Source: Felis catus (Eukaryota). From it: a stretch of 64,000 nucleotides of DNA. Where the stretch lies: the NCBI RefSeq assembly GCF_018350175.1, contig NC_058380.1:91946001-92010000 (forward strand). The letters run 5' to 3'. How positions within the stretch are numbered: the first letter of the stretch is position 1; each line of letters begins with the position of its first letter. Position numbers and translations under genes: made by a program. The notes under the pieces were generated by a model, which worked only from the letters and a program-made list of their open reading frames with translations, did not search any database and was not told where the DNA came from. Positions 278-47,400 of this stretch are shown piece by piece.

Positions 278-2266
278 GGAGGACAACAGGTGTGTTGAGA
301 AGAAGGTCTTAGCAGAGAAAACGGAGTGTGCGGCCAAGTTCAACATCAACTGTAAGTGTCCCCAAGGGCCGAGTGGGAGTTCCCCGAGGGCCGGGTGCGA
401 GTGGCAAGGCTGGTCACAACTGTCCCTGGGTGGTGGCTGTCCTTGTAGGTGGGGATGAGGTGGGAGAGTGCCGGTCCAGTCCCACTCTCGGGGCTGCCTG
501 GAGTGGCCGGTGGGGTGCTGACCCGTGGGTCTGTCTACGCCCTGAGCCATGAGACTTTCAGGCGTGGTTACCCAGCCCGACCACAGAACCGGGGCAGGGA
601 GAGTTTCCGGCACCACGACTGCGGTCAGTGCGCAGCTGAGCTCCTGGACTCTGCTGGAGTGGAGGGGGGGGGGCGGGTTTAAGGATCTTCTACCGAATTC
701 TCTATCACTAACTGCAACATTTAGAGGCTTTTGTGAATTATAAAAAACCACAAATGGAGAGCTAAGTGCTAAAATTTAAACAAAGGAGGTACAGAAACTT
801 CTTGTGGGTTTTCGGTCGGCAAATTCCATTTTTCTCTCACGCTGAAGATTTGCTCTGGGCCACCCTGACCCTCCTCCTCTCTCTCCTTCTTTCATGCCTC
901 ACCCCCACCTCACCCCTACCTCCGGCCCCTCCCTGCCAAGCTGCCAAGCCTGAGTGCTTGGTCAGCAGCTCTCCTGCTCACAGCCCCGGGCACAGCTCCG
1001 ACCGCTGTGTGCGCGTCTGACTGTTCTGTCCCCGCCACCTGACCCATGACACGCCTGGCCTAGGGGACACACCCGGCTCTGTGCTCCCCACTTTCCACTT
1101 CCTGCTGCCGATGGCCACGCTTGCACGTGGGCAGCACCCTGGGAGCTGCAGGACAAGGAACCACACCCGTAGGGGGCTCCTGCTGGACAGGATTTCGTCT
1201 CCCCTTTGGCTCTTCTCCTCTCCCCAGATCTGGATGAGAATGAGCTCATCGTGCTGGACACCGACTACGAGAACTACCTGTTCTTCTGCCTGGAGAACAC
1301 CGACGCCCCCGGGCAGAACCTCGTGTGCCAGTGCCTGAGTACGTCACTGAGCAGGCCCGGGGTCCCTCTGCGGGGCAGGGGGGGCTGAGGACCCCCGGTG
1401 GGGGCCAAGTCCCCTGACATTGCCTCGGGAATCGGGGATCCAGGATCCAGGCCGAGGGGCTGGGCTTAGTGTTCCTGCCTCGGCCCGAGGATGACTGCTA
1501 AGTAGAAGCTTTGCTTGGGGGTGATGTTCCACAAAAGCACCATTAAACCTGTCACGTTCTGAACGGAACGCAAGCCGGTAAGATCTGGTAGCAGGAGGCT
1601 GAGACGCGGCCGCTTTGCCTGAATGAAGCGCTTTGTGTGCGGTTAGAGACGCATTCTTGGCCAGCACATCAGCCCTGCGGGCGAGCCCCAGCCGCCCGGG
1701 GATGTGGGTCCTGGCCTCGTGTCCCTGCAGGGCCCCCGGCGCCGTCCTGGGAGGGCGGGGCGGGGACCCTGGAGGACAGGGGGGCTGAGCCCCGGAGGCC
1801 ACCCCGGGGGCTGACCTCAGGACGCCAGTGTGTCCTTCCTGCTCTCACTCCCTGGACGGGGCTCCCCGAGGCCGTCAAAGCCCCGCGGCCCAGGGACTGA
1901 CCCACCGCCCCCCACAGCCAGGACCCTGAAGGCCGACAACGAGGTCATGGAGAAATTCGACAGAGCCCTCCAGACTCTGCCCGTGCACGTCCGCCTCTTC
2001 TTTGACCCGACCCAGGTGGCAGGTGACCGCCTCCACACCCCGCGTCCCTGCTCTCACCCTGCGTGCGGCTCACCCGTCGGACAGCCATGAGCCCGGGGCG
2101 CGTCCGTCTCCCACGGTGGCCCCCATTCCCCGGGTCCCCGGGGGAGGGGGTGCAGAGCCCCTGGGGTGGGGTCCCCCTCCCACCCCTCTGGGCCCAGGGC
2201 TGCCCTGGTGACCTGTGACCTCTCCCCCTGGCTCTCTCTCCTCCCGCAGAGCAGTGCCGCATCTAG
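278..2266 (+). CDS. LGB1: Beta-lactoglobulin I (PAEP/LGB family lipocalin), 5'-partial; exons 1-2 lie upstream of the window
   Basis: Coding exons 278-351 (74 bp), 1228-1338 (111), 1918-2022 (105), 2250-2266 (TAG), all with AG/GT and consistent phase. Translation: [104 protein letters not shown] motif and BLG cysteine pattern present. Bases 1-230 match intron 2 of the two downstream paralogues. Paralogue number assigned from the recalled feline BLG-I sequence. Confidence 0.92.
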
Positions 2267-7034: not shown

Positions 7035-7800
7035 TGTGCTCAACATCACTCCTCATCAGGGAAATACAAATCAAAACCACGTTGACATATCACCTCACAC
7101 AGCGTGGCTAAAATGAANNNNNNNNNNNNNNNNNNNNNNNNNNNNNNNNNNNNNNNNNNNNNNNNNNNNNNNNNNNNNNNNNNNNNNNNNNNNNNNNNNN
7201 NNNNNNNNNNNNNNNNNNNNNNNNNNNNNNNNNNNNNNNNNNNNNNNNNNNNNNNNNNNNNNNNNNNNNTAGCACTGCTAGGAATTTACTCAAGGGATAC
7301 AGGAGTGCTGATGCAGAGGGGCACTTGTACCCCAATGTTTATAGCAGCACTCTCAACAATAGCCAAATTATGGAAAGAGCCTAAGTGTCCGTCAACCGAT
7401 GAATGGATAAAGAAATTATGGTTTATATACACAATGCAATACTACGTGGCAATGAGAAAGAATGAAATCTGGCCTTTTGTAACAACGTGGTTGGAACTGG
7501 AAGGTATTATGCTAAGTGAAATAAGTCAGGCAGAGAAAGACAGACACCATGTGTTTTCACCCTTATGTGGATCCCGAGAAACTTAACAGAAGACCATGGG
7601 GGAGGGGAAGGGGGAAAAAAGTTACAGAGAGGGAGAGAGCCCAACCATAAGAGACTCTTAAAAACTGAGAATAAACTGAGGGTTGCTGGGGGGTGGGGGG
7701 GGGAGGGGAAAGTGGGTGATGGGCATTGAGGAGGGTACCTGTTGGGATGAGCACTGGGTGTTGTATGGAAACCAACTTGACAATAAATTTCATATTAAAA
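7035..7800 (+). mobile_element. 5'-truncated young carnivore/felid L1 (ORF2 C-terminus, 3'UTR, polyA)
   Basis: ORF ...GTCTPMFIAALSTIAKLWKEPKCPSTDEWIKKLW...; G-rich 3'UTR; AATAAA plus A-tail; perfect 14-bp TSD AATATTTCATCTTT at 7021-7034 and 7801-7814. Confidence 0.93.
7118..7269. other. Assembly gap (152 N) inside the L1
   Basis: Run of n. Confidence 0.99.
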
Positions 7801-11142: not shown

Positions 11143-14100
11143 ATGAAGTGCCTCCTGCTCTCCCTGGGCCTGGCCCTCGTGTGTGGCCTCCAGGCCGCCA
11201 CCCTCCCCCCGACCATGGAGGACCTGGATATAAGACAGGTGTGGGCGTGTGGGGTGGGTGCTGGGGGGCCTACAGAGGGCAGGAAGGCCTGACTGCAGAA
11301 ATCTAAGGGAAGACCAGACGAGGCATAGAGCTAGGCCAGGCCTTTGTCCCCCCAAACGCTGGCTCCGACCACCTGCCTGTTTCCCTCTCACTCCCGGGCG
11401 GAGTCACCCATGACTCTGCCACACTCCGGAAAGGAGCTCACCCAGGACAGCGCTGGGGGAGAGGGCAGCTATTGCAAATATGCAAGAACCCCTTGGGGTG
11501 TTGGCACACGGTAGGAGGTCCTCAGATGTGCCCTGAGTCCTGACGCACCACAATCGCGATCCCACTCGAGAAACCCCGGAGTGTAGGGGACAAACCAGCA
11601 GGCGGGTCGGAAGGAGAGCCCGCTGTGGGGCCGGGGCCGCCTCCCCGCCCCCGATGGCAGCTCAGGCCCCCTCCCCAGGTGGCTGGGACGTGGCACTCCA
11701 TGGCCATGGCGGCCAGCGACATCTCCCTCCTGGACTCGGAGACCGCCCCTCTGAGAGTGTACGTCCAGGAGCTGAGACCCACGCCCCGGGACAACCTGGA
11801 GATCATTCTGCGCAAACGGTGGGTGACCGAGGCCCCCGGGCTGGGGGCCGGCGAGGGCCTGGGCCCAGGGCGGGCGGGCTGGCGGGCAGGGTCCTGACGG
11901 GAGCTGTCTCCGTGGGGGTGGTCCCCAGTGGCCTCGGAGGCCCAGCCTATGGCTCCGGGCCGACAGGCCGATCACACAGGGCGGCCGCAGGTCAGTGAGC
12001 AGAGAGGCCCGTGTGGAGGCCGCCGGTCAGCTGGGGCTGGGGCCCTGGGGGCCTGGGCGGTTCCTGCCACGAGCCCTGTCTGCCCTGGAGAGAGGGCCGG
12101 GGACCCAAGGAATTCTCACTATGATTGGTGATGAGATCCTTAGAGGCGCTGTGACCAATCCCCCCGCGGACGGGGTCAGTTCTGAGCTAGCCCCCGCCCC
12201 CCACCCCCAGCAGCTTTCTGGGCTGGCTTCGTCTACCCCATTGTCACCTTGTCCGAGTCACCTGCTCAAGGCCACAGGGCCACTCACATTTGGGCCAACA
12301 GCTCATGGCCTTGCTCACAGCCGGCCCAGGGCTGGGTGTCCTCAGGGTCTGTGGACGCTTCCTGGAGTCCAGCTCCTGTCCCTCCACTGGGGTTCGGGGG
12401 TGACCCCCACCGCTCTGGCTTTTCAGGGAAAACCACGCATGCATCGAGGGGAACATCATGGCCCAGAGGACCGAGGACCCAGCCGTGTTCATGGTCGACT
12501 GTAAGTGCCCCCACCCCGTGCCCGTGGGGCCACCCCCTGGTCAGCCCCCCTTAGGTGCCCGTGGACAGAGTGCTCCCTCCCGCTCTGAGCCCCCCACCCC
12601 CGACCCCCGCCACGTCCTGACGGCAGGGAAGAGTCAGATGGGTGTGTGGCCTGCCCTGAACGCCAGGCCCGGCTTCTCCTAGCCTACATCGCAAAGGGCA
12701 CTCCCGGGGAGGGGGGGTGGATGAGGCCTGGGGACCAGCCCCCCGCCTCTGGGGCTCAGTCTCCTCCAGGCCCCTTGGCTCCCTGCTCAGGTAGGAAGAC
12801 GGCGGAGAGGCATCTGGTTCCCTGCGAACCCGGGCAGGTTCGGTCCTCGCAGGGAACGCCTGAGGGCAGGCCTGCGGCAACTCCCCTGCTCAGGGACCAG
12901 CGGCCTGTGGCTCCTTAAAAATACCCAAATAAACCAGACCGGTGGGCAAACACCCTGTGGATTTGCCGGTCAATCCTGGAACCTACTTCTGGAACGTTCT
13001 GGGCCTCAACTCCAGCCTTTCTGCCCGGGCCCTGTCTCCTGGGCCTAGAGGCCTCATCCGGGGCGGGCCCCGGGCCCACCCCCTAGCTTCCAGTCCTCCT
13101 CTGCCACCAAGGACGGCCACCGAGCACCCACCCCAGCACCTCCCGTTCTTAAGCTATGAGCAGGCTTTCCAGCAGGACCTCGGGTCATCCTGGGAAGGTG
13201 ACGGGAGCCTCCGAAGAGCTGGGCGGTGCCCGGCAGGGACACTGCTGGCCCACCCGCCGCTGTCCTGCTCCGAGCCCTGCCAGGCCCACGGCCCCACAGA
13301 CTTGGGGTCCCCACACGCTCCCGTTGGCTCCCCACCTTTGAAAAACAGACACCACGGCCCTACCCACCGCGATAATTCTCCATTTCCTTCTGCCCATTGA
13401 TGTCCGCCTAGAGCCGCGACTCCAGTGGGGCTCCGGTTCTGGATTATTTTGTCATCGCTCCCAGGACCTGGGCACCTGTCACAGGAATTGGGGGGGGTCA
13501 CCTGGGTCTTAGCGCCTGAGCGTGTGCACGAATATCCGAAAGGATGAAGGGCACAGCCAGAAGTGGGGACGAGCCTTGGGCCAAGCAGGGCAGAAAATCC
13601 CAGAAGGCCTGGCTGCCGTGCGGATTTTGAAAGACATGCCCGCGGTCTCGGCCCAAGTGCAGGGGTGCCGGTCCGGCGCAGCCAGGGCCGCTCGGAGGGC
13701 CCCCCGCGGGGTCCCTGCCAGGTGTGGGCCGTGGAAATGCACGGCAGGTGAAGGGGAGGCCCGAGGTGGCCAGGCGGGTCGTGGGCCGGATCTCAGGTCT
13801 CTGTTCTGGCCTCTTCTCCAGACCAGGGGGAAAAAAAGATCTCCGTGCTGGACACTGACTACACCCACTACATGTTTTTCTGCATGGAAGCCCCAGCGCC
13901 CGGCACGGAGAACGGCATGATGTGCCAGTATCTGGGTGCGTAGCCGCCACGGGGCCACCCTCCAAGGCGTGGCTCGTGAGCACCCCGGGGGCCCCGGTGG
14001 GAGGAAGGGAGCAGGGCTGCCTCCTGGCCTCCATGGCTCACGTTAGCAAAGGTCCTGGGGTGTGATCCGATGTGGAGTCGTCCACACGGGGAACCCTACC

Positions 14101-14822
14101 ATTGTTCTCAGGTGCTCTCTCCCAGGGCTCCCGAGGGGACCGTGGGCGCTGGGCCAGCAGGACGCTCCCTGGCCAGTTGACTCACGGTGTCCTGATGCGG
14201 CAGGACAGCTGACGGCCCGGGGGCTGTGGGCCCTCTTGTCCTGTGTCCATGCAGACCCCCCGGTGCTATCCTGGGACTGGGCCGGGGGAGGGGCAGGGAC
14301 GCTGGAGGGCAGGGGGGCTGAGCCCCGGAGGCCACCCCGGGAGCTGACCTCAGGACGCCAGTGTGTCCTTCCTGCACTTGCTCTCTGGACGGGGGGGACC
14401 TCGCGCTCCCTAGTGTCATCAAAGCCCCGCGGCCCAGGGACTGACCCACTGCCCCCCCCACGCCCCCCCAGCCAGGACCCTGAAGGCAGACAACGAGGTC
14501 ATGGAGAAATTCGACAGAGCCCTCCAGACCCTGCCCGTGCACATCCGGATCATCCTGGACCTGACCCAGGGGAAGGGTTAGCTCTGCCCTCGGTCGCCCC
14601 CTCCTGGGCTTGCTGTCCCAGCTCTGGGACCCATCAGTGGTTCTGTAGAAATCAGGACAGCGTCATCCTTCATCATTGGTCCCCATTCCCGGGTTGGGGA
14701 GGGGGTGCAGAGCCCCTGAGGCGGGGTTCCCCTCCCACCCCTCTGGGCCCAGGGCTGCCCTGGCGGCCTGTGACCTCTCCCCCCCGGCTCTCTCTCCTCC
14801 CGCAGAGCAGTGCCGCGTCTAG
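11143..14822 (+). CDS. LGB2: Beta-lactoglobulin II precursor, 181 aa
   Basis: Exons 11143-11238, 11679-11818, 12427-12500, 13822-13935, 14472-14576, 14806-14822 (546 bp, all GT-AG). [181 protein letters not shown]. GxW and TDY motifs; 163-aa mature chain typical of type II. Confidence 0.95.
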
Positions 14823-23144: not shown

Positions 23145-26100
23145 ATGAAGTGTCTCCCGCTCGCCCTGGGCCTGGCCCTCGTGTGTGGCCTCCAGGCCGC
23201 CACCGTCCCCCTGACCATGGACGGCCTAGACCTGCAGAAGGTCTGAGGACGGCTGGGGGAGGGGGCGGTGAGCTGCAGGGTGGGCGGGAGACGGGGCCTC
23301 GGCCGGCTGAAGAGTGTGGGTGGAAGCCAGGACCCTGGGAGCCCCCCCCCCCTGCACCCTGTCCTCAGGGCGGCTTTCCTTCGCTTGCCCAAGGTCCAGA
23401 TGGTTCCACGGAACTTGCACAACCTGTCCTTTAAGGCCACCTGGGAACCTAAGATGTCATTTCAAGTGTGGGGGCTCCCAGAGGGGCGTCTGGTCGGTGG
23501 CGGGGGGGTCGCCCAGAGCTCACTGGCTACCACCCCACTTAGACCGGGCCCCCGGCCGGGGTGGGAGGGAGAGCGCGCTGTGGGGCCGGGGCCGCCTCCC
23601 CGCCCCCGATGGCAGCTCAGGCCCCCTCCCCAGGTGGCTGGGACGTGGCACTCCATGGCCATGGCAGCCAGCGACATCTCCCTCCTGGACTCGGAGACCG
23701 CCCCTCTGAGAGTGTACATCCAGGAGCTGAGACCCACGCCCCGGGACAACCTGGAGATCATTCTGCGCAAATGGTGGGTGACCGAGGCCCCCGGGCTGGG
23801 GGCCGGCGAGGGCCTGGGCCCAGGGCGGGCAGGCGGGCGGGCGGGCAGGGTCCTGACAGGAGCTGGCTCCGTGGGGGTGGTCCCCGGTGACGTCAGAGGC
23901 CCAGCCTATGGCTCCGGGCCGACGGGCCGACCACACAGGGCAGCCGCAGGTCAGTGCGCAGAGAGGCCCGCGTGGAGGCCGGCCGGTCAGCTGGGGGTGC
24001 TGGGGCCCTGGGGGCCTGGGCGGTTCCTGCCACGAGCCCTGTCCGCCCTGGAGAGGTTGTGGGGGTACCAGAGAGAGCTGGGTCAGTGTGGGGGGCAGAG
24101 AGGAGGACACAAACCCCACAATTGTCTGCTGACTGCTGGGGCGAGGGCGCTCCCACCCCCGCTCCCTCTGGCTCCCTCCGCCCTCTCATGGGGTGGCCCT
24201 GTCCCACCGGGTCACCTGCCGAGTGCCGCCCAGGCCTCCCAGAGCCGGGCTTCTGCTCCCCACCCGCAGCTCGGCTCTGTCACGGGAAGGTCTGTGCAGG
24301 CGGCCCGCAGACACGGCCTTCTTTCAGGGAGCATGGCAGGTGTGTGCAGAAGAAGGTCTGGGCAGAAAAAACGGAGCTCCCTGCTGAGTTCAAGATCAGC
24401 TGTAAGTGCCGGGCCCCCGGCCCACCCTGGACACCCCCGCTGGCGGCTCCCGGGCAGCACGGCGGGGTCCGTGCTCCGGCCCCAGGGTGCTGACAAGAGC
24501 GACACGGTCCTCAGTGCCAGCTCTCACTGCCCTTCCCGCCTTCAGGGCCGTGGGCAGGTCCCTTCTGGCCCTCCCTGACCCCCACGGCCATGAGACCCAG
24601 CTCGCTGTCTGTGGGCCGGGCCTGGGAGGCACCCGCACCCGGCTGTCCTCTGCACCGCCTCCCAGGCCGCCTGCACCAGGACATCTCCTGCTTCCCACGG
24701 GTCAGGGCGCCCCATGACGCCCGGCCTGCCCCCTGGTTCCTGCACTCCTAGACCCCCGTTGGGTCATTCCCTCCCGTGCTCGCTCCCGCATTCCTCACCA
24801 GGTCCAGAATGAGAAGGCCCCGTGGGAGGGGCCGCTTCCTCCACGGCCGTCCCCAGCGGGCAGCCTGGGCTGCGTCCCACTTTGCCCCCCCTAGGCCAGC
24901 CCTCCAGCCTGGCTTCGTGCGACGGCTGCCGACCGGCCCCAGGGGCTCCAGCACAGAGCTGCGTGGGTGGGGGTGTGGCACCGAGCTGTGCAGCTGGCAG
25001 TCCCCACGGCCGCCGAGGGCCACCGTCACCTCCGGCCCATACTCACCCCCACCCCCCGTTTCCATGCATCCCACGGCTCCGCCCTTCTTCTCCGAGGTGC
25101 CCATTCATTCAAGATCAGTGTGGAACCCCGCTTCTTAACCTCTCTGGGCCCCAGGACACGGGGGTGGGGGGTCCGGGGTTGAGTGCTGAGTGAGCCCATC
25201 TAGCAGGAGGCACGGCATTTCTGGCGGGGGGTCCACAGTTAACAGCCAGGGCCTCGCAGCCCCCTGTGCCTTGTGGGGGTGCAGGAGAAGCCCCCCACCC
25301 CGGCCTTGCCATGGGGCCGCCCTGAGGAGACCCATGCTCTCCCTCCTGTGGAGGGAAGACCCGGGACTCTCTCTCCCCAGATCTGGATGAGAACGAGCTC
25401 ATCGTGCTGGACACCGACTACGAGAACTACCTGTTCTTCTGCCTGGAGAACACCGACGCCCCCGGGCAGAACCTCGTGTGCCAGTGCCTGAGTACGTCAC
25501 TGAGCAGGCCCGGCGTCCCTCTGCGGGGCGGGGGGCTGAGGACCCCCGGTGGGGGCCAAGTCCCCTGACATTGCCTCGGGAATCGGGGATCCAGGATCCA
25601 GGCTGAGGGGCTGGGCTTAGTGTTCCTGCCTCGGCCCGAGGATGACTGCTAAGTAGAAGCTTTGCTTGGGGGTGATGTTCCACAAAAGCACCATTAAACC
25701 TGTCACGTTCTGAACGGAACGCAAGCCGGTAAGATCTGGTAGCAGGAGGCTGAGACGCGGCCGCTTTGCCTGAATGAAGCGCTTTGTGTACGGTTAGAGA
25801 CGCGTTCTTGGCCAGCACATCAGCCCTGCGGGCGAGCCCCAGCCGCCCGGGGACGTGGGTCCTGGCCTCGTGTCCCTGCAGGGCCCCCGGCGCTGTCCTG
25901 GGAGGGCGGGGCGGGGACCCTGGAGGACACAGGGGCTGAGCCCGGAGGCCACCCCGGGGGCTGACCTCAGGACGCCAGTGTGTGCTTCCTGCTCTGGCTC
26001 CCTGGACGGGGCTCCCCGAGGCCGTCAAAGCCCCGCGGCCCAGGGACTGACCCACTGCCCCCCACAGCCAGGACCCTGAAGGCCGACAACGAGGTCATGG

Positions 26101-26416
26101 AGAAATTCGACAGAGCCCTCCAGACTCTGCCCGTGGACGTCCGCCTCTTCTTTGACCCGACCCAGGTGGCAGGTGACCGCCTCCACACCCCGCGTCCCTG
26201 CTGTCACCCTGCGTGCGGCTCACCCGTCGGACAGCCATGAGCCCGGGGCGCGTCCGTCTCCCACGGTGGCCCCCATTCCCCGGGCCCCCGGGGGAGGGGG
26301 TGCAGAGCCCCTGGGGTGGGGTCCCCCTCCCACCCCTCTGGGCCCAGGGCTGCCCCGGCGACCTGTGACCTCTCCCCCTGGCTCTCTCTCCTCCCGCAGA
26401 GCAGTGCCGCGTCTAG
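23145..26416 (+). CDS. LGB3: Beta-lactoglobulin III precursor, 180 aa
   Basis: Exons 23145-23240, 23634-23773, 24328-24401, 25381-25491, 26068-26172, 26400-26416 (543 bp, all GT-AG). [180 protein letters not shown]. Confidence 0.93.
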
Positions 26417-37194: not shown

Positions 37195-37476
37195 CCGAGC
37201 CCTGGGGTGACCCGACGCCTCCAGGAAGCCAGCAATGTAGGTAAACTGCTCTGACAGCACCCGCCCCCCGGGTCAGATGACACCCTTCACGCCCTTCAGA
37301 CACACGTGGGTGTCGGGAGGCCACGTCCTCCTGTGGGAGGCATTCTGGGTGCTCAGGGGCCCGGGCCAGACGGCAGGACTGGCCAGGGCAGCTGTCCAGA
37401 CAAGCAGCCTCTGGAGGACACATACAAGGAAGGGATGGGAGCTGCCCGGCCTCTCCCCGCTCTGGGCCCTGTGGTC

Positions 37477-40400
37477 ATGGTCCCCCAGAGAGGGCCACTC
37501 CTGCTGCTGGCCCTCAGCCTGGGCCTGGCTTGTGCCCAGCAGACGCTAGAAGAGGTGCCCGTACAGCCAGGCTTTAATGCCCAGAAGGTAACCGAGCCGG
37601 GTCGGGTCCCAGTTCGGCCCTGGGACGGGGATGAGGGTCCTGGTGTCTCGTGGTGGCACTCAACCAGCAGGAGCCGAGGAGAGAGGCCACGTGAGGGGCA
37701 GGGGTGTCCCCAGCCCAGGCCCAGCATCTGCTCAGGCCACCGGGCACCCAGCTGAGCACTGTCACCCTTGGGACGGGAAGGGACCTGCCCATTGCCCACC
37801 ACCGCGGGGGTCGTGGCTGGTGCTGGCTGGCAGGAGCAACCCCGGGCCTCAGTGGTGGCCCCAAGACAGTCCCCCCCCCCGCCCAGGTCCAGGGCAACAG
37901 AGGACGGAGCCTGGACCCCACACGGGAGGAGCTGAAGGGGGCAGGGAAGGGAGAGGCAGCAGGAAGGGGCCCAGGGGACCCAGAGGGCAGCCTGACAGGG
38001 AAGGGCATTTGCAACAGGGACGGGCCACTTGTCCCCCACGCTGACCCCCCCTTCCCGCACACCCGCAGGTGGAGGGGCGCTGGCTGACCATCCAGCTGGC
38101 CTCTAGCCGTGCACACCTGGTCTCCCCAGCCGACCCCCTGAAGCTCGGCCTCCATTCCATCTGGACCCGGGATGAGGATGTGACGTTCGTCTTGTTTTGG
38201 ACGTAAGCGTGGCCCCTGCAGCTCCTCACGGGGTGGTCTTCCCAGGGGCCTCCCAGGGGACAAGGACCAGGGGTTAGACCCGGAGGGACACGGGGCACCG
38301 AGCTGCAGGCTCGAGACCGTCCTGAGAGGTAGGAGGTTTCACCTCGGAAGCCCCCAAAGCTTTACGACAGGGGCCGTGGGGAGACACACGGGGCCCGGTC
38401 CTTGGCCGCCGGCGTCCCTTCCCGCCTTGTGAGCTGGAGGGGCCGGGGCAGCACCGCGGTCAGTTGGTCAGGAACATCTACGGCGGTGACGAGCCGTGCT
38501 GAACCCAGAGACACAACACTCTGCACTGGTGGCCTTGATGACAGTGAGAGCCACGTCCTTGCCTGCGCTGGGCCACAGACACCACGGCGCTGGCCTGTGC
38601 AGCCCCAGGGTCTGCTGGTACCCAGCCCACCCCCGCCCACCCCAGGTGAGAAAGGAAGACCGGGGGGAGGGGGGCAGGTCTTCGTGTGGAGCCCAGGTGA
38701 CCGGGGACGGCCAGGACCAGGCCACCCACCCAGAGACCTGAGGCTCCGAGCCGAGGACAGACAGGTGCAAGTCCTCCCGGGGGCTTTGGTTCCGTTCCAG
38801 AAACCAGGAAGCCCCTGGTTCCTCACTCCTACCCTCTAGCCCCGTCCAGGCACCTCAGGGGCCCACCCTCTTCCTCCCTGCTGGGTGACCCTCGGGAACC
38901 CAGGTAGCCGAGGGATTCAGGTGGACACCCGGGACCTCAGCCAGGGCGCCTCCGATGCCCCCGGGGGCAGAGCCCAAGCCGGCACCGTCCGGTGCCAGTA
39001 GACAGGGAGAGGCCGTGACCCCGGAACGCTCCCTCCTCTTTCCCCAGAGGAGAGGGCGTGTGCCAAGGAGTCAACGTCACCGTCCACCCGACTGGTCTCC
39101 AAGGCCAGTTCCAAGGCTCCTGTGAGTGGCCCAGGCCCCCGGCCAGGGTGCCGTGCTGGGCGAGGGGAGGGCAGGGGACGCCCGATGCCCTGCACCAGGG
39201 TCACGGGGGAAGCGCCGTGCCGGAGGGAGACGCCCTCCCGGTGCCCAGCGCTGCCCCGGGGGTGGGTCTGGGGGCGGAGGAGAGAGGGCTCACCTGTCAC
39301 CGCCCGGGGTCTCCCACAGGGGAGGGAGGCAATAGTATGCACGTCTGCTTCGTTGGCACCGACTACAGTAACCTCGTTCTTTACGTCCGCCTCGAGGACG
39401 CCGGCGAGGTCACCAGCCTGTGGGCGCTGCTGGGTAGGTGGTGGCTCTCCCCGACCCCGGGGCGTCTGCCGGGCCCCGTGCTTACTCCCGGCGGCTCCCT
39501 GGCCGCTCAGAGCTGCACCCCTGTGGGCGGCCCTCAGGTCGGGCATCCCTGCCCGCACCGCTCAATCCCTCAGGAATTCATCCAGCCCATCTCCCGCCTG
39601 CTTCGCCTGTGTCCTGGGAGCGGGGACACTGCACCAGAGCAGAAACCCTCCCCTGTCTTCGCCGGGGAGATAGCCTGTGAGCCTAAAAGCCACTGAGTCA
39701 CATCAGGCTCCAGAAAGTGGAAGTGCCACGTGCAGAAGACCGGGGGTCACGGGGGGAGGGTGTGGAGGGTGGGCTTCGTGGGGAGGGGGGCGCGCCTTGT
39801 CCTCCAGACCAGACGGAGGGGAGGGGCTGTCCCGGGGATGGGCCCCACCAGAGCCAGAGCCCAGGGGGTGGGCAGCGGGGAGGGGGCGGCCAGGTCCTGC
39901 AGGCAGCAGGCTGCGGGGCGAAGGGAGGACCCCCGGGGACCCTCCCCCGAGGGGCTAGGGCTGCACCTGGGCTGCCCAGGGTGGACCTGCTTTCGGAGGG
40001 GGGAGGCGGCCCAAGGCTAGACCGCGGCAACCAGCCAGACGGTAGGAGGAGGGGCGCCCTGAGAAAGGTCGGGGCCCGTGGGCTCTCGGCGTCCCCCCCA
40101 CCCGACCCTGTGATTCCAGCCAGAACGACGCCCGGGGACCCCACGTGGCTGGGGAAGTACCTGGAGTACATTAGGGAGCTCCGGCTGCACAAAGCCCCGG
40201 TCTTCAATCTCGATGGTGAGTGCGTGGACGCTTCCCCGACGCCAGGCCGCGTTGGGAGCATAAGACCAGGGCACAGAAAACCACGGCCAGCCTCTCCGGG
40301 GCCCATGTGGGCGGGCCTGCGCTGGGCGCCCTGTAACGTGGTGACCCGGGCACAATATCCGTCTCCATTCCGTGGGTTCAGACACTGAGGCTCAGAGAGG

Positions 40401-40904
40401 CTTAGAAATAAGGCCAAGGCCACACAGCAGGGCCCCTCACCCTCCCTTCCCTGTGCGTCATTCAGTCCATCGACAAACACAGGCCAGGCTGTTTGGGGGG
40501 CACGGTGCATGTAGATGGAATGAGACAGACACGTTGTCCAGCCCTTGTGCGGTTTCACAGGGACAGGGCAGCGGGGACAGGGCAGCGGGGACAGGGCAGT
40601 TCACTGATCTGCTGGGAAAAGAGAGCCCAGAGCAGGGGAGCACGGCCGAGCTGTGGGTCACCCACGAGGGGGGCTGGCTGAGGGGCAGGCGGGGTCGTGG
40701 AGTCTGGGGGTCAAAGTGAGGGCCCCGGGACCGTGGCAGGACGTGGCTGCCTTGGGTGCTGGATGGCAGAAGGCAAGGTGATCCCAGAGAGGGACGGGCT
40801 GCGAGCTGTGTTTGCATGATTTCGAAGTGGACGGACAAAGCCTCGGCGTATCCCCATCCTGTTCTCTTCCCTCCACAGCCCGGTGTCCCCCAGCTGAAGC
40901 CTAG
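37477..40904 (+). CDS. Unnamed secreted lipocalin, 184 aa, intact
   Basis: Exons 37477-37587, 38069-38202, 39048-39121, 39320-39433, 40120-40215, 40879-40904 (555 bp, all GT-AG, phases 0/2/1/1/1). MVPQRGPLLLLALSLGLACA-QQTLEEVPVQPGFNAQKVEGRWLTIQLASSRAHLVSPADPLKLGLHSIWTRDEDVTFVLFWTGEGVCQGVNVTVHPTGLQGQFQGSWEGGNSMHVCFVGTDYSNLVLYVRLEDAGEVTSLWALLARTTPGDPTWLGKYLEYIRELRLHKAPVFNLDARCPPAEA. Signal peptide plus GxW, TDY and LxR motifs. Confidence 0.9.
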
Positions 40905-43253
40905 GTCAGGGCCGCCCGAGGCTTCCTGTCCGGCCCTCCTGCCCCCTGCCCTCGCCTCTCCCCGCTTCCCCCACCTTGCTTGCTCCGGTGCCTCCCAACC
41001 CCCCCAGGCAGCCCCTCCAGCCTGGGCCTGGCCCCCACCTGTCCGCCTCCCAGCCTCTCCCGGCCCGGCCCAGGGGCGTGAGAACGCTCTAGGAGGGGAC
41101 AGGTGGCCCCCGGAAGTCTGGGCCACAGCGAACACAGCACTGCAGTCTGGCGGATGGGGCCACCCGTGGAGTCCTTTCATGGACACGACCCTGCGAGGGG
41201 CTGGACTGTACCCTCTGACCTGCTCCCGCCACCTGGGTCCTGCTAGGATGACTCCAGAGAGGTGCCCTGGGCCCCGTGAGCCGATGCAACGAGTCCCCGC
41301 CCAGGTCAGAGGGCGCCGAGTGAGCGCAGCACCAGTCCGTGCTCCCCAGAGGAGCCAGGTCAACACAGGCCCGTGCGCCTGCGCCACAGATGAGACATGC
41401 CGGCGCCGTCCCCTGGAAGTCAAGGCCACTACGAGGGCAGTGCCCGGACGGAAGGCGTCCCCCTCTGCCCAGGTGAGCCGGGGACCACCCGCTGCAGGGC
41501 AGGCTCTCAGGAAACGGGGTCAGGGGCCTCCATAGTTACCGTCCGGAAATGCCAGAGACAGGTATGACCGGATCCCGCCCCAGACACGCCCTGGGCAAAG
41601 ACAGGGCCTCCCAGACCCACGCCTCGCAGCAAGGCAACATCCACGGCCACGTGAGGCCGGCACGACGCCGAGCTGGCCGCCGGTGCGGATGTCTGGCTGT
41701 GGCTCCCTCAGCCCCTGGAGACGAACAGGTGCTCAAACACGATGCTTTCCTGCCCATTCGGCAAGAAATCTGCAGAACGTACGGGGAGAAAAAAAATTTT
41801 AAATCCTTACTCTGGGACGCTGAAAAACGACTTGAGTAAATGGATATGGGATATTCCCGCAGAGTCCTTCAACGTCATAAATATCTAATAATCTTCAAAT
41901 TAACCTATCTATCCGAGCAATCCAGTCAACGTTCCAGTGGGATCCTTACCCCAAACTGCAAACCAGAATCTAAAAGGAACAAAAGTTTTGAAATGTTTGT
42001 CAGAGGAGTCATGCAAATACTGTGTTATTCTAACAAAATATGAACGTACAGCGATTCCAATTGTGGGGAGTTAGCTCAGGGACAGAAAGAAAGATCAAGA
42101 AACGAACCCTAACAAGTATAATAACTCAATGTGGTGTACAGAGGGCCTGTCTTAAGGGGCATTATTTATTCAACAAACATTGTTGGGGGAAGTGGCCAAG
42201 ATATTTAGAGAAAAAAAAAAAGTTTTGATATCTAACTCTTTGCATTATCTCAAAATAATTCCTGATTGATTCCAAATAAGCAAGAAACCTTGAGAGTTCT
42301 ACACTGTGTGGAGGAATGGGATGGAACCCCACCCCATGCATCCTACCCTACGGATGGGATGGGATGAGATCCTACCCCACACATAGTAAGGGAAAAGATG
42401 GTAATTATGTTTTCGGCGCATCGAAACCATCCTCGCCAAAATTACGCATCAACCTGAACTCAATGTCGTCGACAAGCTCGATAAAGGGTTCACGTCCCAT
42501 CTGCGAAGATATGTATCCAAGCCTGTGACCGGGGCCCCTATGTGAGAAAAGTGGCACACACACACAGACAGCCCGTCCCTACGGCATAAAAGGAGCTTTG
42601 ACATCATAAGGATCCCAGAGAAAGATACGCTATTTTTACTTACCAAATCGGCAAGATTCCATTTTTTCCACAGCTGAGTCAGCGCCCACTGTGTGGGGGT
42701 GCTCGCGCTTGCTCGGAGAGATGGCCCTGGCCTTTGCGTCCTGTGGACAGACCTGCTCTTGGGCCCGAAACTTTGAGGCATGAACACGTTCACCTGCCCT
42801 TGTCCCAGAGAAGCCAAGGAACTCACGGTGTCTCCAATGCCGTGATTTCATCAGAGGGAGAAGGTTAGAGCCCCTCCAGTAAGACCCCCGGCCTTGCCCA
42901 CCGGTCGGGGAAACGCTTCTGTTTGCTCGAGTCAGGTACTGAACCGCACGGCCCCCTCTCAGGCCTGACCTGAGATCGCTAACGCTAAGCGTCGCGCATG
43001 TGGGGCTTGTGGCTCACAGAACATCTCTTTTCTCCGTTTGGAGACATTCACAGAGTTCTGTGTGAGAGCCACTCGGTGAAACCCAGGAGTGGGTGTGGCA
43101 GGATGCGGTCGAAGGGGCACGGACGGGGCTTGGCCCCAGGTGGACTCGGGGACGAGCCGGCAGCCTCGTGCCTGCCTTCCCGGCCCCCCGCTTCTACTCC
43201 GGGGACCGATCCTCAGGATTTCGGTGTTTTATTTGCCATTGGGGGAACCCTCA

Positions 43254-43603
43254 CTGTATGGCTCACCGGCCGTCACACGGACCCACATTCTGGAGGCTCA
43301 AACCTCAGACGCGTATCCCGCGCGTCCTAGAGGCTGGAGTCCGAGATCCAGGCGGGGCGGGGCTGCTACCTCCCGAGGCGTCCCTCCTGGCGTGCAGACG
43401 GCCGTCTTCTCCTGTGTCCTCACACGGTCGCCCCTCTGTGTGTGCGTGTCCCGATCTCCTGTCTCAAAAGGTCAGGGCCCACCTCGTGGCTTCACCGTAA
43501 CCTCATCACCTCTGTGAAGACCTCGTCTCCAGGTCGTCATGTGCTGGGGTGCTGGGGTCAGGGCCTCCACGTGCGAACTGGGGGACACAATTCAGGCCTG
43601 ACG
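43254..43603 (-). mobile_element. MaLR solo LTR (MLT1A-like)
   Basis: ggaggctggagtccgagatc, gcagacggccgtcttctc and gggggacacaattcag motifs. Confidence 0.7.
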
Positions 43604-43935
43604 CTATCTAACCCTCTTTGTTGTCCCATAAAGAAAAGCTTTGGGCCCTCCAGCCCTCGTAGGGACTCTCTAAGCCCTCCCTGCCCTAAACATACAGTGG
43701 TCTCTTCCACGATGGCATGCCACCACCCACGGGGGCAGTTCCCCCTCCAGAGCCACCCATGTCCCCCTCCAGAGCCGCCCACGTCCCCCTCCTCGCTTTT
43801 AGCACTCCTGGCTACGGAGGCACATGCATATTCTGTGAGCTGATGAATGTTTCCTCTGTATTTTAACCCTTTGCCCTTTGGGGTATGTATGTCTTTTTCT
43901 GGACTACAATCTTTCTCCATTTAAAAAATCATTTT

Positions 43936-44096
43936 GGGGCACCTGGGTGGCTCAGTCGGCTAAGCATCCGACTCTTGATTCGGTTCAGGTCATGAACTTG
44001 CAGTCTGTGAGTTTGAGCCCCGCATCAGGCTCTGCTGACAATGAGGACCCTGCTTGGGATTCTGTCTCTCCTTCGCTCTCTGCCCCTCCCCTGACT

Positions 44097-44139
<43 letters not shown>

Positions 44140-44165
44140 ATGAATAAACTTAAAAAAAAAAATAA
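43936..44165 (+). mobile_element. Can-SINE with expanded (TC)n
   Basis: Full body, (TC)n at ~44099-44136, A-tail. Confidence 0.92.
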
Positions 44166-44412: not shown

Positions 44413-47400
44413 TCAGAAGTACCGGCGGGAGAGCCGCGTGGCCTTGACCGACCAGACCTGTGGGGGGGGCCGGAGTGCAGCGTTCCAGCTGTATTCGGGA
44501 GACAGCAGCTTGGTGGGCTTGTGCGTGAAAAAATACTTGTTCAGGTGCCTCTCGTAGGTGCTGTTCAGCCCATTCTTGTGGTCGTGAGTGACCCCTTGCA
44601 GGTAACCTTCGATGAGGGTTAAGACCTCCAGGGGCCTGCCACCAATGACCGAGCCGTCATAGTAGAAGTCCCCCTGCCCAAACGGGATGCACGCTGCCAA
44701 TTTGGGCCTCCTCTCGTAAGGGATGTCCTTGTTTTTAAAATACCACCAGGCATGGAGCTGAGCCACGGACGCGCCCAGGGTCTCCACCCCAAAGTCGTTC
44801 TGGAAGACCCTGTTGACGGTCATGCTGAACAGAAAGTCGACTTCGTCCTCAATGTGCCCTAGTATGTGCTCGGCCAGGGAACTCATGCGTGTGAGGTGAA
44901 AGTCACCCCACCGGTCTCCTTTGATGGGGAGGACCTTGAAAGTTCGGAGAGGATCTGGCTCCAGGTCCGGCAGCCTGGGCAAGGCGTCCACCATGATGTA
45001 AAAGACAACTCTGTAGCCGCTCATGAAGTGCTTATTCGCCGATCGCATGAATAGCTCCAGGTACTGGTCCGCAGTCCTGCAAAACACACACGCGCACGGA
45101 GGAAGCCGCGCCCCGAACGCTCGCGAGAGATCAACGCGCGTCCCCAAACGTCTAACTTAGGAGTCACCGACGCTCCAGGACCCCCAGCAGGAAAGGGGAG
45201 ACAGGCCCGGTCTATAGTTTCGACGGCACTGGTCAGTGAGAAAGACATATTGACCTGGAGGGTCTGGGAAAAAGGCCTTTAAAGTTTTGGAACGACTGTT
45301 GGGAAGAAAGAAAATGTGAACTCCATGGTATCTGTAAAAAGGCAGCCAAGTGGCTTTAACGACCCAGCTAAGGAAGGAGTCTTTGTTTTTGTTCAGGACA
45401 GCCACATACGGTGGTTGTGGGCAGCTACGGGCAGCCTTTTGGAGGTAGAAGGTCCCGGGCACTCATTCATATATTTTTTTTTTTTTTCAGAATAAAACGG
45501 GGCAAACCGATGGCCCCTACCTGCCAGTAGCAAGGACAGCCAAGCCTATGGTGAGGTTCTGTCTCCCGTAGTATCTCCCCAGGACCTGTCTATTGAAGGT
45601 GCCTTCCCATATGACTGGGGCCAGCCAGTCTGTGATTGTTACAACATCAGGGCGTTTCCTGTTAACAGACGAGAAGCCAGTGAAGCCGGTGCCCCAGCGG
45701 AGGCCGTCCAAGCGACACCGGCTGACGCCTACAGAGCCCTTACCATGTGCCGGGCACTGTGTTGGTGTTCATTCGGTCCTTGCAGTGGTCTGTGCGGGAA
45801 GCACAATTATGGTCCTTGTTCTTGGTGTGCAGAAACAGAGGCACAGATCAGTGGAGCGAGCTGCCTAATACCGCAGAGCTGACACATGTGGGTCAGTATG
45901 CGAGACCCAGCACCTGCTGCTTTTGTCACCACGCCACCTGCCTCTGGGCCCAGGGGCAACCTCTTCTGAGCTCCGGCTCAGCTGAACGGAGGCAGCTCAG
46001 AGTCAGAACGCCCTCTGGTATCGCCTGAAGCCAGGGCTGCACGCACACTACCTCTGCGTCCCTATGCTTTATCTTCCCTTCCTCCTCTTTTTCTCTCCCT
46101 CCCCTTTCCCTAGAAGATCCAGAAGGTGCTTTCTCTAAACTTCCCCCTCTTGCATTAGGTCCATTAGTGCAATCTGGCAGAAATAAAAAGTCTAAAAAGG
46201 AGAGAGACGTTAGATGTGCTTTCAATAACAGCACTTAAAGCATGCAAAGCTGGTTCAATATGTGAAAATCGTTTGATGCACCTGCCATAGCAGGAAATTA
46301 AAGAACAGTCGGATGCCCATACCAGTTGACGCAGAAAAAAACATTATACAAAGTCCAACACCCATTCATGACGAAAAAAAAAAAAGAAAGAAAAGAAAGA
46401 AATGAAAAACTCCCAGAAAAAAATAGAAATAGAGGGGAATTACCTTAACTTGATCAAGAGCATCTACAAAATTCCTGTGGCTAACGTCATACTCGACGGT
46501 GCAAGACTGAATGCTTTCTCACTAAACCTGGGAATGAGGCAGGGATGTTCCCTCTCACCAGCTCATTGTCAGCAGAGTTATGTGAATTCTAGCCATTGCA
46601 ATAAGGTAGGAAAAGGAAATAAAAGCACCAGACTAGAAAGGAGAAGATAATAACATCCCTATATGCAGATGATTTGTTTACATATAAAATCCTACAAAAT
46701 CTACCCAAATCTCCTAGAACTAACAAGTGAAGTCAGCAAGGTTACAGGACACAAGATCAGCACACACACAGAATGAATCCATTTCCGTATACTAACAAGG
46801 AACACGCAGGAACTAAAATTAAAAACACAATGCTATTTGCAGTTGCCTCCAAAAAAAAAAAAAGAAATATTTCGATACACCACTGTACCCACCAGAAGTC
46901 CCTGCCCATTCCCCCCGCTTCCTGTAACCCACGGCAATAACTAATCCATGGTCTGTCTGTGTAGATTTGCTTATACTGGGAATTTCATACAAATAGAATC
47001 ATGCCGCGTGTGGTCTTTGGTGCCTGGCTTCTTTCGCTTAGCCTGCTCGTGGGGAGGTTCTGTATTGTAGCATGGATCAGTAGTTCCTTTCTTTTGTGGC
47101 TAATGATATTCTGTGGCTTGGATTTTGTTTATTCACTTGTCAGTCGATGGACGTTTTAGTGGTCTGCATTTTCCGGCGACTATCAATGGTACCGCTATGA
47201 ACGTTTCTATGCAAGACTTTCTGTAAACATACTTTTTTTTTTTTTAATTCTCTTGGGTGTGTACCTAGAGGGGAAATTTCTGGGTCATATTGTAATTTCA
47301 CGGCTAACTTTTTTAAGAACTGCCAAACGTTTCCAAGCAGCTGCATCATTTTACGTTCCCACCAGCAGTTCGCAAGAGTTCCAAACTCGCTGCTTTCTCA

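What the first reader, a model, noticed from the sequence alone, without database searches (positions are those of the whole stretch)
37477..40904. Intact, unnamed lipocalin gene between the BLG cluster and GLT6D1
Seen: six exons splice to a 184-aa ORF with no lesions. Intron phases are 0/2/1/1/1 and exon 3 is 74 bp, as in the other lipocalins in the window. It has a signal peptide, GRW, TDY and LAR motifs, a likely C87-C179 disulfide, an unpaired C116 just before TDY, an N91-V-T sequon and six Trp. The N-terminus (VPVQPGFNAQKVEGRW) resembles the PTGDS/LCN2/C8G type rather than BLG or LCN9. I recall a similar uncharacterised human ORF between PAEP and GLT6D1 but cannot confirm it. Inference: a conserved, functionally uncharacterised secreted carrier, possibly enzymatic given the spare thiol, lying between lactation and male-reproductive genes. 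As a felid lipocalin it is also a candidate chemosignal carrier or allergen.
Basis: partly seen in the sequence, partly recalled or inferred. Interest (0 to 1): 0.85.

Follow-up and report, generated by a model that had tools for sequence, protein, structure and literature searches.

The report
Orphan cat lipocalin mislabelled as beta-lactoglobulin
This is a real, intact cat gene for a small secreted carrier protein of the lipocalin type that placental mammals share; public databases already hold it under the misleading name "beta-lactoglobulin", and I found no study of its function.

Summary
Six GT-AG exons at 37477-40904 (+) splice to a 184-aa ORF with intron phases 0/2/1/1/1, and every listed motif is present.

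The gene is not undiscovered. The spliced protein is letter-for-letter UniProt A0ABI8ABL8 (Felis catus). It also equals residues 15-198 of RefSeq XP_019672359.3, "beta-lactoglobulin isoform X2", which starts at an in-frame upstream ATG at 37435.

It belongs to an orthogroup whose tree follows the mammalian orders. Members include mouse Gm13539, rat "lipocalin-15 like 1", and a human RefSeq protein clustered with the macaque ortholog. Afrotheria and Xenarthra have it too.

It is not a beta-lactoglobulin. The three true BLG genes lie upstream in the same window and show no detectable similarity to it. Solved BLG, LCN15, MUP/OBP3, Can f 2, C8G and PTGDS are all about equally remote (17-25% identity).

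The "spare thiol" C116 occurs in only 8 of 36 orthologs (Arg or His elsewhere), and by alignment it points away from the cavity, so an enzyme role is not supported. Cavity-lining positions are strongly conserved, including Tyr128 and Arg130.

Most likely it is a secreted, N-glycosylated carrier of a conserved small ligand. I found no functional paper. The scan has no earlier report of this gene on other DNA.

The parts
37435..37437 (+). In-frame upstream ATG, an alternative start giving 198 aa
   Evidence: It lies 42 nt upstream of the 37477 ATG in the same frame. RefSeq cat model P0105 uses it. In Leopardus the downstream Met is Thr, so the upstream ATG must be used there.
37477..37587 (+). 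Exon 1: start codon, signal peptide (aa 1-20, 37477-37536) and the mature N-terminus from the invariant Q21
   Evidence: Donor AAG|GTAACC, phase 0. Q21 is invariant in 36/36 orthologs.
38069..38202 (+). Exon 2 (134 nt): G40-R41-W42 motif, strand A, conserved A-B loop and strands B-C
   Evidence: This exon alone retrieved orthologs at E 4e-21 to 1e-7.
39048..39121 (+). Exon 3 (74 nt): C87 and the N91-V-T sequon
   Evidence: C87 is present in 36/36 orthologs and the sequon in 31/36.
39320..39433 (+). Exon 4 (114 nt): C116, T120-D121-Y122, and strand G with Y128 and R130
40120..40215 (+). Exon 5 (96 nt): R146, W154 and the C-terminal helix
   Evidence: R146 and W154 are invariant. The model has a helix at 152-164.
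40879..40904 (+). Exon 6 coding part: C179 and the TAG stop at 40902-40904, directly followed by GT
   Evidence: C179 is present in 33/36 orthologs. TAG|GTCAGG suggests a further non-coding exon; the 3' end is unresolved.
39122..39319 (+). Intron 3, 198 nt. Retaining it would keep the reading frame, judging from a cheetah isoform
   Evidence: The cheetah 'isoform X2' P0071 maps continuously over 39040-39438 at 96% identity.

Best explanation
This is the cat member of an orthogroup of kernel lipocalins found across placental mammals, whose gene tree follows the orders. Its other members include mouse Gm13539, rat 'lipocalin-15 like 1', and the proteins NCBI pipelines label 'beta-lactoglobulin'. 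The gene encodes a signal peptide and a mature protein of about 164 aa (18 kDa, pI about 5.3). That protein folds as an eight-stranded barrel with a C-terminal helix. It is probably clamped by a C87-C179 disulfide and probably N-glycosylated at N91. It most likely works as an extracellular carrier that holds a small hydrophobic or amphipathic ligand inside the barrel. The cavity-lining positions are nearly invariant across placental mammals, including Tyr128 and Arg130 at sites that line the cavity in BLG. I therefore infer one conserved endogenous ligand, possibly with an acidic or polar head, rather than a species-specific odorant repertoire. It is neither a beta-lactoglobulin nor an enzyme. 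Shown here: the gene model, its identity to public records, the order-following gene tree (single copy is inferred, not checked), the fold class and the conservation pattern. Inferred: secretion, the disulfide, glycosylation, the type of ligand, and the tissue.
For: The exon model is intact and canonical and identical to P0107 and P0105 of Felis catus. Pfam Lipocalin scores 35 bits against a cut-off of 23. The AlphaFold2 model shows eight strands plus a helix at 152-164 (pLDDT 64.5, pTM 0.62). Foldseek matches only lipocalins, at E about 1e-8 and TM 0.6-0.66. Orthologs of 181-190 aa occur in carnivores, bats, primates, rodents, horse, pigs, camelids, Afrotheria and Xenarthra. In a 47-taxon ML tree Carnivora, Chiroptera, Primates and Atlantogenata are each recovered with 96-100% support. 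G40, R41, C87 and R146 are invariant, and W42, T120, D121, Y122 and C179 are nearly so. The fifteen positions aligned to BLG cavity and cavity-entrance residues are mostly at least 30/36 identical, with L65 36/36, Y128 34/36 and R130 34/36; only position 90 is freely variable. Mouse Gm13539 appears in an olfactory-mucosa RNA table next to Scgb2b27, Crisp1 and Dcpp genes (PMC5880952). It also appears in a parotid differential-expression list next to Scgb1b/2b genes (PMC10877373).
Against: No dN/dS could be computed because no ortholog DNA could be fetched. The protein evolves fairly fast: 84% identity to bear, 78% to dog, 70% to macaque and 57% to mouse. The structure model is only of moderate confidence, and no coordinates were available, so side-chain orientation rests on an alignment to BLG at about 23% identity. 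No canonical AATAAA lies on the + strand within 3.2 kb of the stop, so the 3' end is unknown. The mouse tissue hints come from two tables in papers about other subjects. No ruminant, cetacean, lagomorph or marsupial ortholog appeared among 126 hits, so the gene may be dispensable in some lineages.
Confidence: 0.75

Rival explanations
1. It is a chemosignal or odorant carrier and a potential allergen of cat secretions (tears, nasal mucus, saliva). It would work like MUPs, OBPs, Can f 2 or Fel d 4.
For: Can f 2, panda OBP3, MUPs and alpha-2u-globulin are among its closest solved relatives. The mouse ortholog's RNA is listed with nasal and lacrimal-type secretory gene products.
Against: The gene tree follows the mammalian orders and shows no sign of lineage-specific expansions. 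Cavity residues are nearly invariant across placental mammals. That pattern is the opposite of the birth-and-death turnover known for pheromone and odorant carriers (my own knowledge). It is not Fel d 4 (36 bits) and not the Can f 2 ortholog (42 bits). No cat expression or IgE data exist.
Confidence: 0.15
2. It is a true beta-lactoglobulin paralog, that is, a milk whey protein gene, as the NCBI product name implies.
For: It lies 11 kb downstream of three BLG genes on the same strand. It shares their exon phases. BLG is among the Foldseek and HMMER hits.
Against: TBLASTN of the model against the window finds nothing in the BLG genes (best E 0.7). Its exons 2 and 4 give no BLASTP alignment to BLG exons 2 and 4. 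BLG scores no better than LCN15 or OBP3 (45 against 51 bits). The BLG Cys106, Cys119 and Cys121 pattern is absent. Orthologs exist in rodents and in the Homininae cluster, species said to make no milk BLG (PMC8173191).
Confidence: 0.05
3. It is a lipocalin-type enzyme that uses the unpaired Cys116 as a catalytic thiol, by analogy with prostaglandin D synthase.
For: The cat protein has an odd Cys at 116. The N-terminal V-x-V-Q-P-x-F segment resembles the LCN15/PTGDS type.
Against: Cys116 is present in 8 of 36 orthologs and is Arg or His in 28. It aligns to BLG L93, the residue between cavity-facing V92 and V94 (plus established BLG structure knowledge). No Cys lies between residues 20 and 86, the region upstream of the first disulfide Cys where (from my own knowledge) the PTGDS catalytic Cys lies.
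Confidence: 0.03
4. It has an intact reading frame but is functionally decaying or silent in the cat.
For: No expression data could be obtained. No canonical polyA signal lies nearby. Other felids have intron-retaining predicted isoforms. The protein evolves fast.
Against: The ORF is intact in at least 11 felid species, with only 1-5 amino-acid differences from cat, and in more than 45 other mammals. The signature residues are all kept.
Confidence: 0.05

Closest known systems
Orthogroup known only by placeholder names: mouse Gm13539 (UniProt A0A1B0GSM6), rat 'lipocalin-15 like 1', NCBI 'beta-lactoglobulin' XP/NP records (cat XP_019672359.3, UniProt A0ABI8ABL8)
   Same: It is the same gene. The cat records are identical to the spliced model. 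Other species are 57-98% identical and colinear, and the gene tree follows the mammalian orders.
   Different: Nothing differs. The difference lies between the name and the protein: it is not BLG. I found no functional paper for any member.
Human lipocalin 15 (PDB 2xst)
   Same: It is the joint best solved match to the family profile (51 bits, E 9e-13). The alignment starts in the N-terminal E-V-x-x-Q-P-x-F-x-A-x-K segment. The rat curators' name points the same way.
   Different: It is a remote relative only, not an ortholog. The strand-G cavity positions aligned to Tyr128 and Arg130 carry Leu and Ile in LCN15.
Dog allergen Can f 2 (PDB 3l4r) and the MUP/OBP3/alpha-2u-globulin group
   Same: Can f 2 is the best single-sequence match (42 bits, E 7e-10), and both disulfide Cys align. 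Panda OBP3 scores 51 bits against the profile. All are secreted exocrine-type carriers.
   Different: Foldseek identity to this group is about 17-21%. Some dog, fox and horse orthologs are labelled 'Can f 2' or 'Can f 2-like' by pipelines, but the match is far too weak for orthology.
Beta-lactoglobulin / glycodelin (PAEP)
   Same: Neighbouring genes on the same strand, the same exon phases, the same fold (TM 0.61-0.66) and the same single conserved disulfide position.
   Different: Identity is 22-24%. There is no exon-level similarity to the cat BLG genes. The second disulfide and the free Cys121 are absent. The gene is also present in species without milk BLG.
Lipocalin-type prostaglandin D synthase (PTGDS)
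   Same: A similar N-terminal segment and the same fold.
   Different: There is no catalytic Cys equivalent, and profile scores are only 36-39 bits.

Membership tests
Kernel lipocalins (Pfam PF00061) | Pfam Lipocalin profile above the gathering score | tested here: met
   35 bits against a cut-off of 23 for P0107, which is identical to the model. Single exons gave no Pfam hit.
Kernel lipocalins (Pfam PF00061) | Three structurally conserved regions: G-x-W near the N-terminus, T-D-Y at the F-G turn, and Arg at the end of strand H | tested here: met
   G40-R41-W42, T120-D121-Y122 and R146. They are conserved in 33-36 of 36 orthologs.
Kernel lipocalins (Pfam PF00061) | Eight-stranded antiparallel barrel followed by an alpha-helix | tested here: met
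   The AF2 model has strands at 44-49, 62-71, 74-83, 86-96, 102-107, 111-120, 124-133 and 136-145, and a helix at 152-164. Confidence is moderate (pLDDT 64.5). The listed top Foldseek hits are all lipocalins.
Kernel lipocalins (Pfam PF00061) | Disulfide linking strand D to the C-terminal tail | tested here: inconclusive
   C87 (36/36) and C179 (33/36) are conserved, and both align to the Cys of Can f 2. The bond itself cannot be shown with these tools.
Kernel lipocalins (Pfam PF00061) | Conserved gene structure: six coding exons with phases 0/2/1/1/1 | tested here: met
   That this pattern is typical of the 9q34-type lipocalin genes is my own knowledge, not tested here.
Beta-lactoglobulin | Clear sequence similarity to BLG beyond the generic lipocalin level | tested here: not met
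   There is no TBLASTN hit to the three BLG genes in the window. There is no BLASTP alignment of exons 2 and 4. Identity to solved BLG is 22-24%. BLG scores below LCN15 and OBP3.
Beta-lactoglobulin | Second disulfide Cys106-Cys119 and free Cys121 | tested here: not met
   The only Cys are at 19, 87, 116 and 179. The cat BLG exon 4 copies show the C...C-Q-C pattern.
Beta-lactoglobulin | Major whey protein of milk | not testable with these tools
Prostaglandin D synthase-type enzyme | Conserved catalytic Cys facing the cavity, upstream of the first disulfide Cys | tested here: not met
   No Cys lies between residues 20 and 86. C116 is present in only 8/36 orthologs.
Can f 2 (dog allergen) orthologs | Ortholog-level identity to Can f 2 | tested here: not met
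   42 bits, E 7e-10, a remote match. The dog ortholog of this gene is a different protein, 78% identical to the cat one.
Equine uterocalin P19 | Sequence identity to P19 | not tested
   No P19 sequence or paper text was available. The horse orthologs of this gene carry other labels. One naked mole-rat isoform is labelled 'uterocalin-like'.

The most novel reading that the evidence does not exclude
An overlooked secreted lipocalin shared by placental mammals, humans included, that carries one conserved endogenous ligand in a cavity containing a nearly invariant Tyr128 and Arg130. It would be made in nasal or lacrimal-type glands and has escaped study because pipelines label it beta-lactoglobulin.
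Probability: 0.3. Interest if true: 0.5.

Novelty: already known. Interest (0 to 1): 0.3.

Why it matters
The gene is real and conserved, but it hides behind a wrong name. "Beta-lactoglobulin" records for rodents, and one human RefSeq record listed in the macaque ortholog's cluster, belong to this orthogroup rather than to the milk protein. That can mislead work on milk-protein evolution and on allergens. For the cat it adds one uncharacterised secreted lipocalin to the list of candidate carriers and allergens. For lipocalin biology it offers an orphan with an unusually conserved cavity that could be tested directly by expression and ligand screening.

Tried and rejected
- **Exon-by-exon searches.** These were done by reference. 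Pfam gave nothing. PDB gave only a weak Can f 2 hit for exon 2 (E 0.08) and chance hits for exon 4. Exon 2 against the representative library did find the orthologs.
- **The joined model.** It was never sent to a search tool. It was built only inside local scripts. All full-length searches used P0107, a database protein that proved identical to it.
- **Literature.** Searches for A0A1B0GUV8/NP_001362586, Lcn15l1, Lcn18-21 and A0A1B0GSM6 found nothing relevant. Most 'Gm13539' hits were grant numbers. The uterocalin papers PMC1221847 and PMC11146898 are not held.
- **Other checks.** The protein atlas added nothing beyond 'lipocalin'.
- **Human material.** The human-labelled proteins P0123 and P0130 listed were not aligned or searched further, and no human contig was fetched.
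Full report
**Observation.** I read window 37300-41100 and rebuilt the model in a script. The six exons are 37477-37587, 38069-38202, 39048-39121, 39320-39433, 40120-40215 and 40879-40904, all on the + strand. Every intron has a GT donor and an AG acceptor. Exon lengths are 111, 134, 74, 114, 96 and 26 nt, giving 555 nt in total. The intron phases are 0/2/1/1/1, and the ORF is 184 aa with no internal stop.
- Cys at 19, 87, 116 and 179
- Trp at 42, 69, 81, 107, 141 and 154
- N91-V-T, G40-R41-W42, T120-D121-Y122 and L144-A145-R146

**How the searches were done.** The joined sequence was never sent to a search tool; it existed only in local scripts. Single exons gave no Pfam hit. In PDB they gave only a weak Can f 2 match for exon 2 (E 0.08) and chance matches for exon 4. 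Exon 2 alone, run against 1.84 billion representative proteins, found 23 related mammalian proteins or fragments at E 4e-21 to 4e-6.

Cluster look-ups then returned two Felis catus records:
- P0107 is UniProt A0ABI8ABL8, 184 aa.
- P0105 is XP_019672359.3 / XP_044899381.1, "beta-lactoglobulin isoform X2", 198 aa.

A script showed that P0107 is identical to the model, and that P0105 is identical from its residue 15 onward. All full-length analyses used P0107 by reference. So the window is domestic cat, and both public annotation pipelines already predict exactly this gene. The RefSeq model starts at an in-frame ATG at 37435. That adds 14 residues ahead of the hydrophobic core and leaves the mature protein unchanged. 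In Leopardus the downstream Met is Thr, so the upstream ATG must be used there.

**What it is.** P0107 passes the Pfam Lipocalin threshold (35 bits against 23). An AlphaFold2 model built on 36 orthologs has moderate confidence (pLDDT 64.5, pTM 0.62). It shows eight strands followed by a helix at 152-164. Foldseek against PDB returns only lipocalins, all at about the same level: BLG, MUPs, C8-gamma, PTGDS, Can f 2, Can f 6 and Fel d 4, at E about 1e-8, TM 0.6-0.66 and 17-25% identity.

By sequence, the closest solved chains to the single protein are:
- Can f 2, 42 bits
- LCN15, 41 bits
- MUP-I, 37 bits
- BLG, 37 bits

Against the family profile the best are:
- panda OBP3 and human LCN15, 51 bits each
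- alpha-2u-globulin and BLG, 45 bits
- PTGDS, 39 bits

No characterised family stands out. The alignment to LCN15 begins in the E-V-P-V-Q-P-G-F-x-A-Q-K segment.

**It is not a beta-lactoglobulin.** Three genuine BLG genes lie upstream on the same strand. Their exon signatures are at 1257/1953, at 11685/13851/14507 and at 23640/25410/26103. TBLASTN of the model against the whole window finds nothing there (best E 0.7). Its exons 2 and 4 give no BLASTP alignment to BLG exons 2 and 4. The BLG Cys106/119/121 pattern is absent. Downstream, a 244-aa ORF at 44413-45147 on the minus strand matches Glyco_transf_6 at 232 bits. That fits a convergent GLT6D1-side neighbour.

**Distribution.** Searches with a naked mole-rat ortholog and with the 36-sequence profile returned 77 and 126 proteins. 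Orthologs of mostly 181-190 aa occur in these groups:
- felids (11 species), canids, bears, mustelids, seals, hyena and meerkat
- many bats
- horse and rhinoceros
- pigs, peccary and camelids
- New and Old World monkeys, apes and lemurs
- colugo and hedgehog
- many rodents
- Afrotheria (golden mole, aardvark, tenrec, elephant shrew)
- Xenarthra (armadillo, tamandua)

The names are inconsistent: "beta-lactoglobulin", "minor allergen Can f 2", "uterocalin-like", "salivary lipocalin-like", "prostaglandin-H2 D-isomerase-like", "epididymal-specific lipocalin-9-like" and "lipocalin". The mouse entry is "Predicted gene 13539" (A0A1B0GSM6), and the rat entry is "lipocalin-15 like 1". A human RefSeq protein, NP_001362586.1 "beta-lactoglobulin precursor", sits in the same 90% cluster as the macaque ortholog. 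I did not analyse the human entries further, and I did not test their genomic position.

A 47-taxon ML tree recovers Carnivora, Chiroptera, Primates and Atlantogenata with 96-100% support, and Rodentia nearly so. Isoforms, fragments and the human-containing records were left out of that tree. This is the pattern of an orthogroup dating from the placental ancestor. I read it as single-copy, but I did not check copy number species by species, and Tamandua returned two records on different contigs. No marsupial, ruminant, cetacean or lagomorph protein appeared. The word pre-filter limits what that absence means.

**Constraint.** The indirect evidence is as follows:
- The ORF is intact and colinear in more than 45 species.
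- The bear and ferret proteins align to the cat one over all 184 residues without a gap.
- The listed 184- and 198-aa felid models differ from cat at only 1-5 residues.
- Signature residues are invariant or nearly so.

The protein still evolves fairly fast: 84% identity to bear, 78% to dog, 70% to macaque and 57% to mouse. The constraint is therefore moderate, as is usual for secreted lipocalins.

**The spare thiol.** Position 116 is Cys in 8 of 36 orthologs, Arg in 16 and His in 12. In the profile alignment to BLG it corresponds to L93. From established BLG structures, L93 lies between V92 and V94, which line the cavity, so residue 116 should point outward. No Cys lies between residues 20 and 86, the region upstream of the first disulfide Cys where, from my own knowledge, the PTGDS catalytic Cys lies. 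The enzyme idea is not supported.

Other points from the same column counts:
- C87 is present in 36/36 orthologs and C179 in 33/36.
- The N91 sequon is kept in 31/36.
- W42, W141 and W154 are conserved, and W81 mostly so.
- W69 is variable, and W107 is seen only in the three felid rows.

**Likely mechanism.** The fifteen positions that align with BLG's cavity and cavity-entrance residues are far more conserved than the 62% average:

| Position | Conservation in 36 orthologs |
|---|---|
| L61 | 35 |
| L63 | 34 |
| L65 | 36 |
| I68 | 35 |
| F77 | 30 |
| L79 | 35 |
| W81 | 30 |
| 90 | variable (V 19) |
| V/I92 | 35 |
| G105 | 35 |
| V115 | 31 |
| F117 | 33 |
| I/V126 | 36 |
| Y128 | 34 |
| R130 | 34 |

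The A-B loop (L54, V55, P57, D59, P60) is also conserved. The E-F and G-H loops carry indels. From this I infer a secreted, probably N-glycosylated protein of about 18 kDa (pI 5.3). It would carry one conserved small ligand, and the Tyr/Arg pair on strand G may contact a polar or acidic head group. This rests on an alignment, not on coordinates.

The only expression data I found are two tables for mouse Gm13539:
- It is fairly abundant in olfactory mucosa and falls with age, together with Scgb2b27, Crisp1 and Dcpp genes (PMC5880952).
- It is among the top "up-regulated" genes in a parotid data set, together with Scgb1b/2b genes (PMC10877373).

I read this as exocrine nasal or lacrimal-type gland expression, but that is an inference. 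Three Logan contigs of 1.4-2.3 kb encode full-length rodent and bat orthologs. They are too short to be genomic if the introns resemble the cat's, which suggests spliced transcripts. I could not open them to check.

**Open points.** The 3' end is unknown. The stop codon abuts a GT, and no AATAAA lies on the + strand before 44143, so a non-coding seventh exon is plausible. Predicted isoforms in other felids map to retained intron 3 or retained intron 4. Intron 3 is 198 nt, so retaining it would keep the frame. Whether the horse ortholog is equine uterocalin P19 could not be checked. The horse records carry other labels, and a 2017 paper states that nothing like uterocalin is known outside equids (PMC5383852).

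**Verdict.** This is a correct and careful gene model of a real, conserved, functionally unstudied lipocalin. It is already in public annotation under a misleading name. The enzyme suggestion fails, and the chemosignal or allergen suggestion remains open. It is of modest interest, mainly as an annotation correction and as an orphan with a conserved cavity.

Noticed in passing
RefSeq uses it for cat, leopard, leopard cat, jaguarundi and cheetah. In Leopardus the downstream Met is Thr. An ACATACAAGG (TATA-like) string at 37420-37429 lies only 5 nt upstream of this ATG, so if it is a real TATA box the transcript would probably start downstream of this ATG.
   Followed up: partly
window 40902-44143: The stop codon TAG is immediately followed by GT (TAG|GTCAGG). 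No AATAAA occurs on the + strand for 3.2 kb; only AGTAAA at 41835 and CATAAA at 41876, 42585 and 43627. The 3' UTR, polyA site or seventh exon is unresolved.
   Followed up: partly
window 39122-39319: Intron 3 is 198 nt. A cheetah 'isoform X2' maps continuously across it at 96% identity, so retaining it would insert 66 residues in frame. Other felid isoforms read into intron 4 (39434-39693).
   Followed up: partly
window 44413-45147 (-): A 244-aa ORF matches Glycosyltransferase family 6 at 232 bits. It is the large last exon of a GLT6D1-side gene, convergent with the lipocalin.
   Followed up: partly
window 1257-1953, 11685-14507, 23640-26103 (+): Three beta-lactoglobulin genes. The exon 2 peptides at 11685 and 23640 are almost identical. 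The exon 4 peptides at 1257 and 25410 are identical, while the one at 13851 is divergent.
   Followed up: partly
orthogroup: No ruminant, cetacean, lagomorph, elephant or marsupial ortholog appeared among 126 hits, although pigs, camelids, Afrotheria and Xenarthra have the gene. This may reflect lineage losses or the limits of the search.
   Followed up: no
orthogroup: Pipelines give this one orthogroup at least eight different product names (beta-lactoglobulin, Can f 2, uterocalin-like, salivary lipocalin-like, PTGDS-like, LCN9-like, lipocalin, lipocalin-15 like 1). They include a human RefSeq 'beta-lactoglobulin precursor'.
   Followed up: partly
window 62 and 162 of the protein (38141-38143; 40168-40170): Cat has K62 where almost all mammals have R (shared with Prionailurus bengalensis), and I162 where all other felids have V.
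   Followed up: no
window 7118-7269: A run of 152 N (an assembly gap or masked stretch), left untouched.
   Followed up: no
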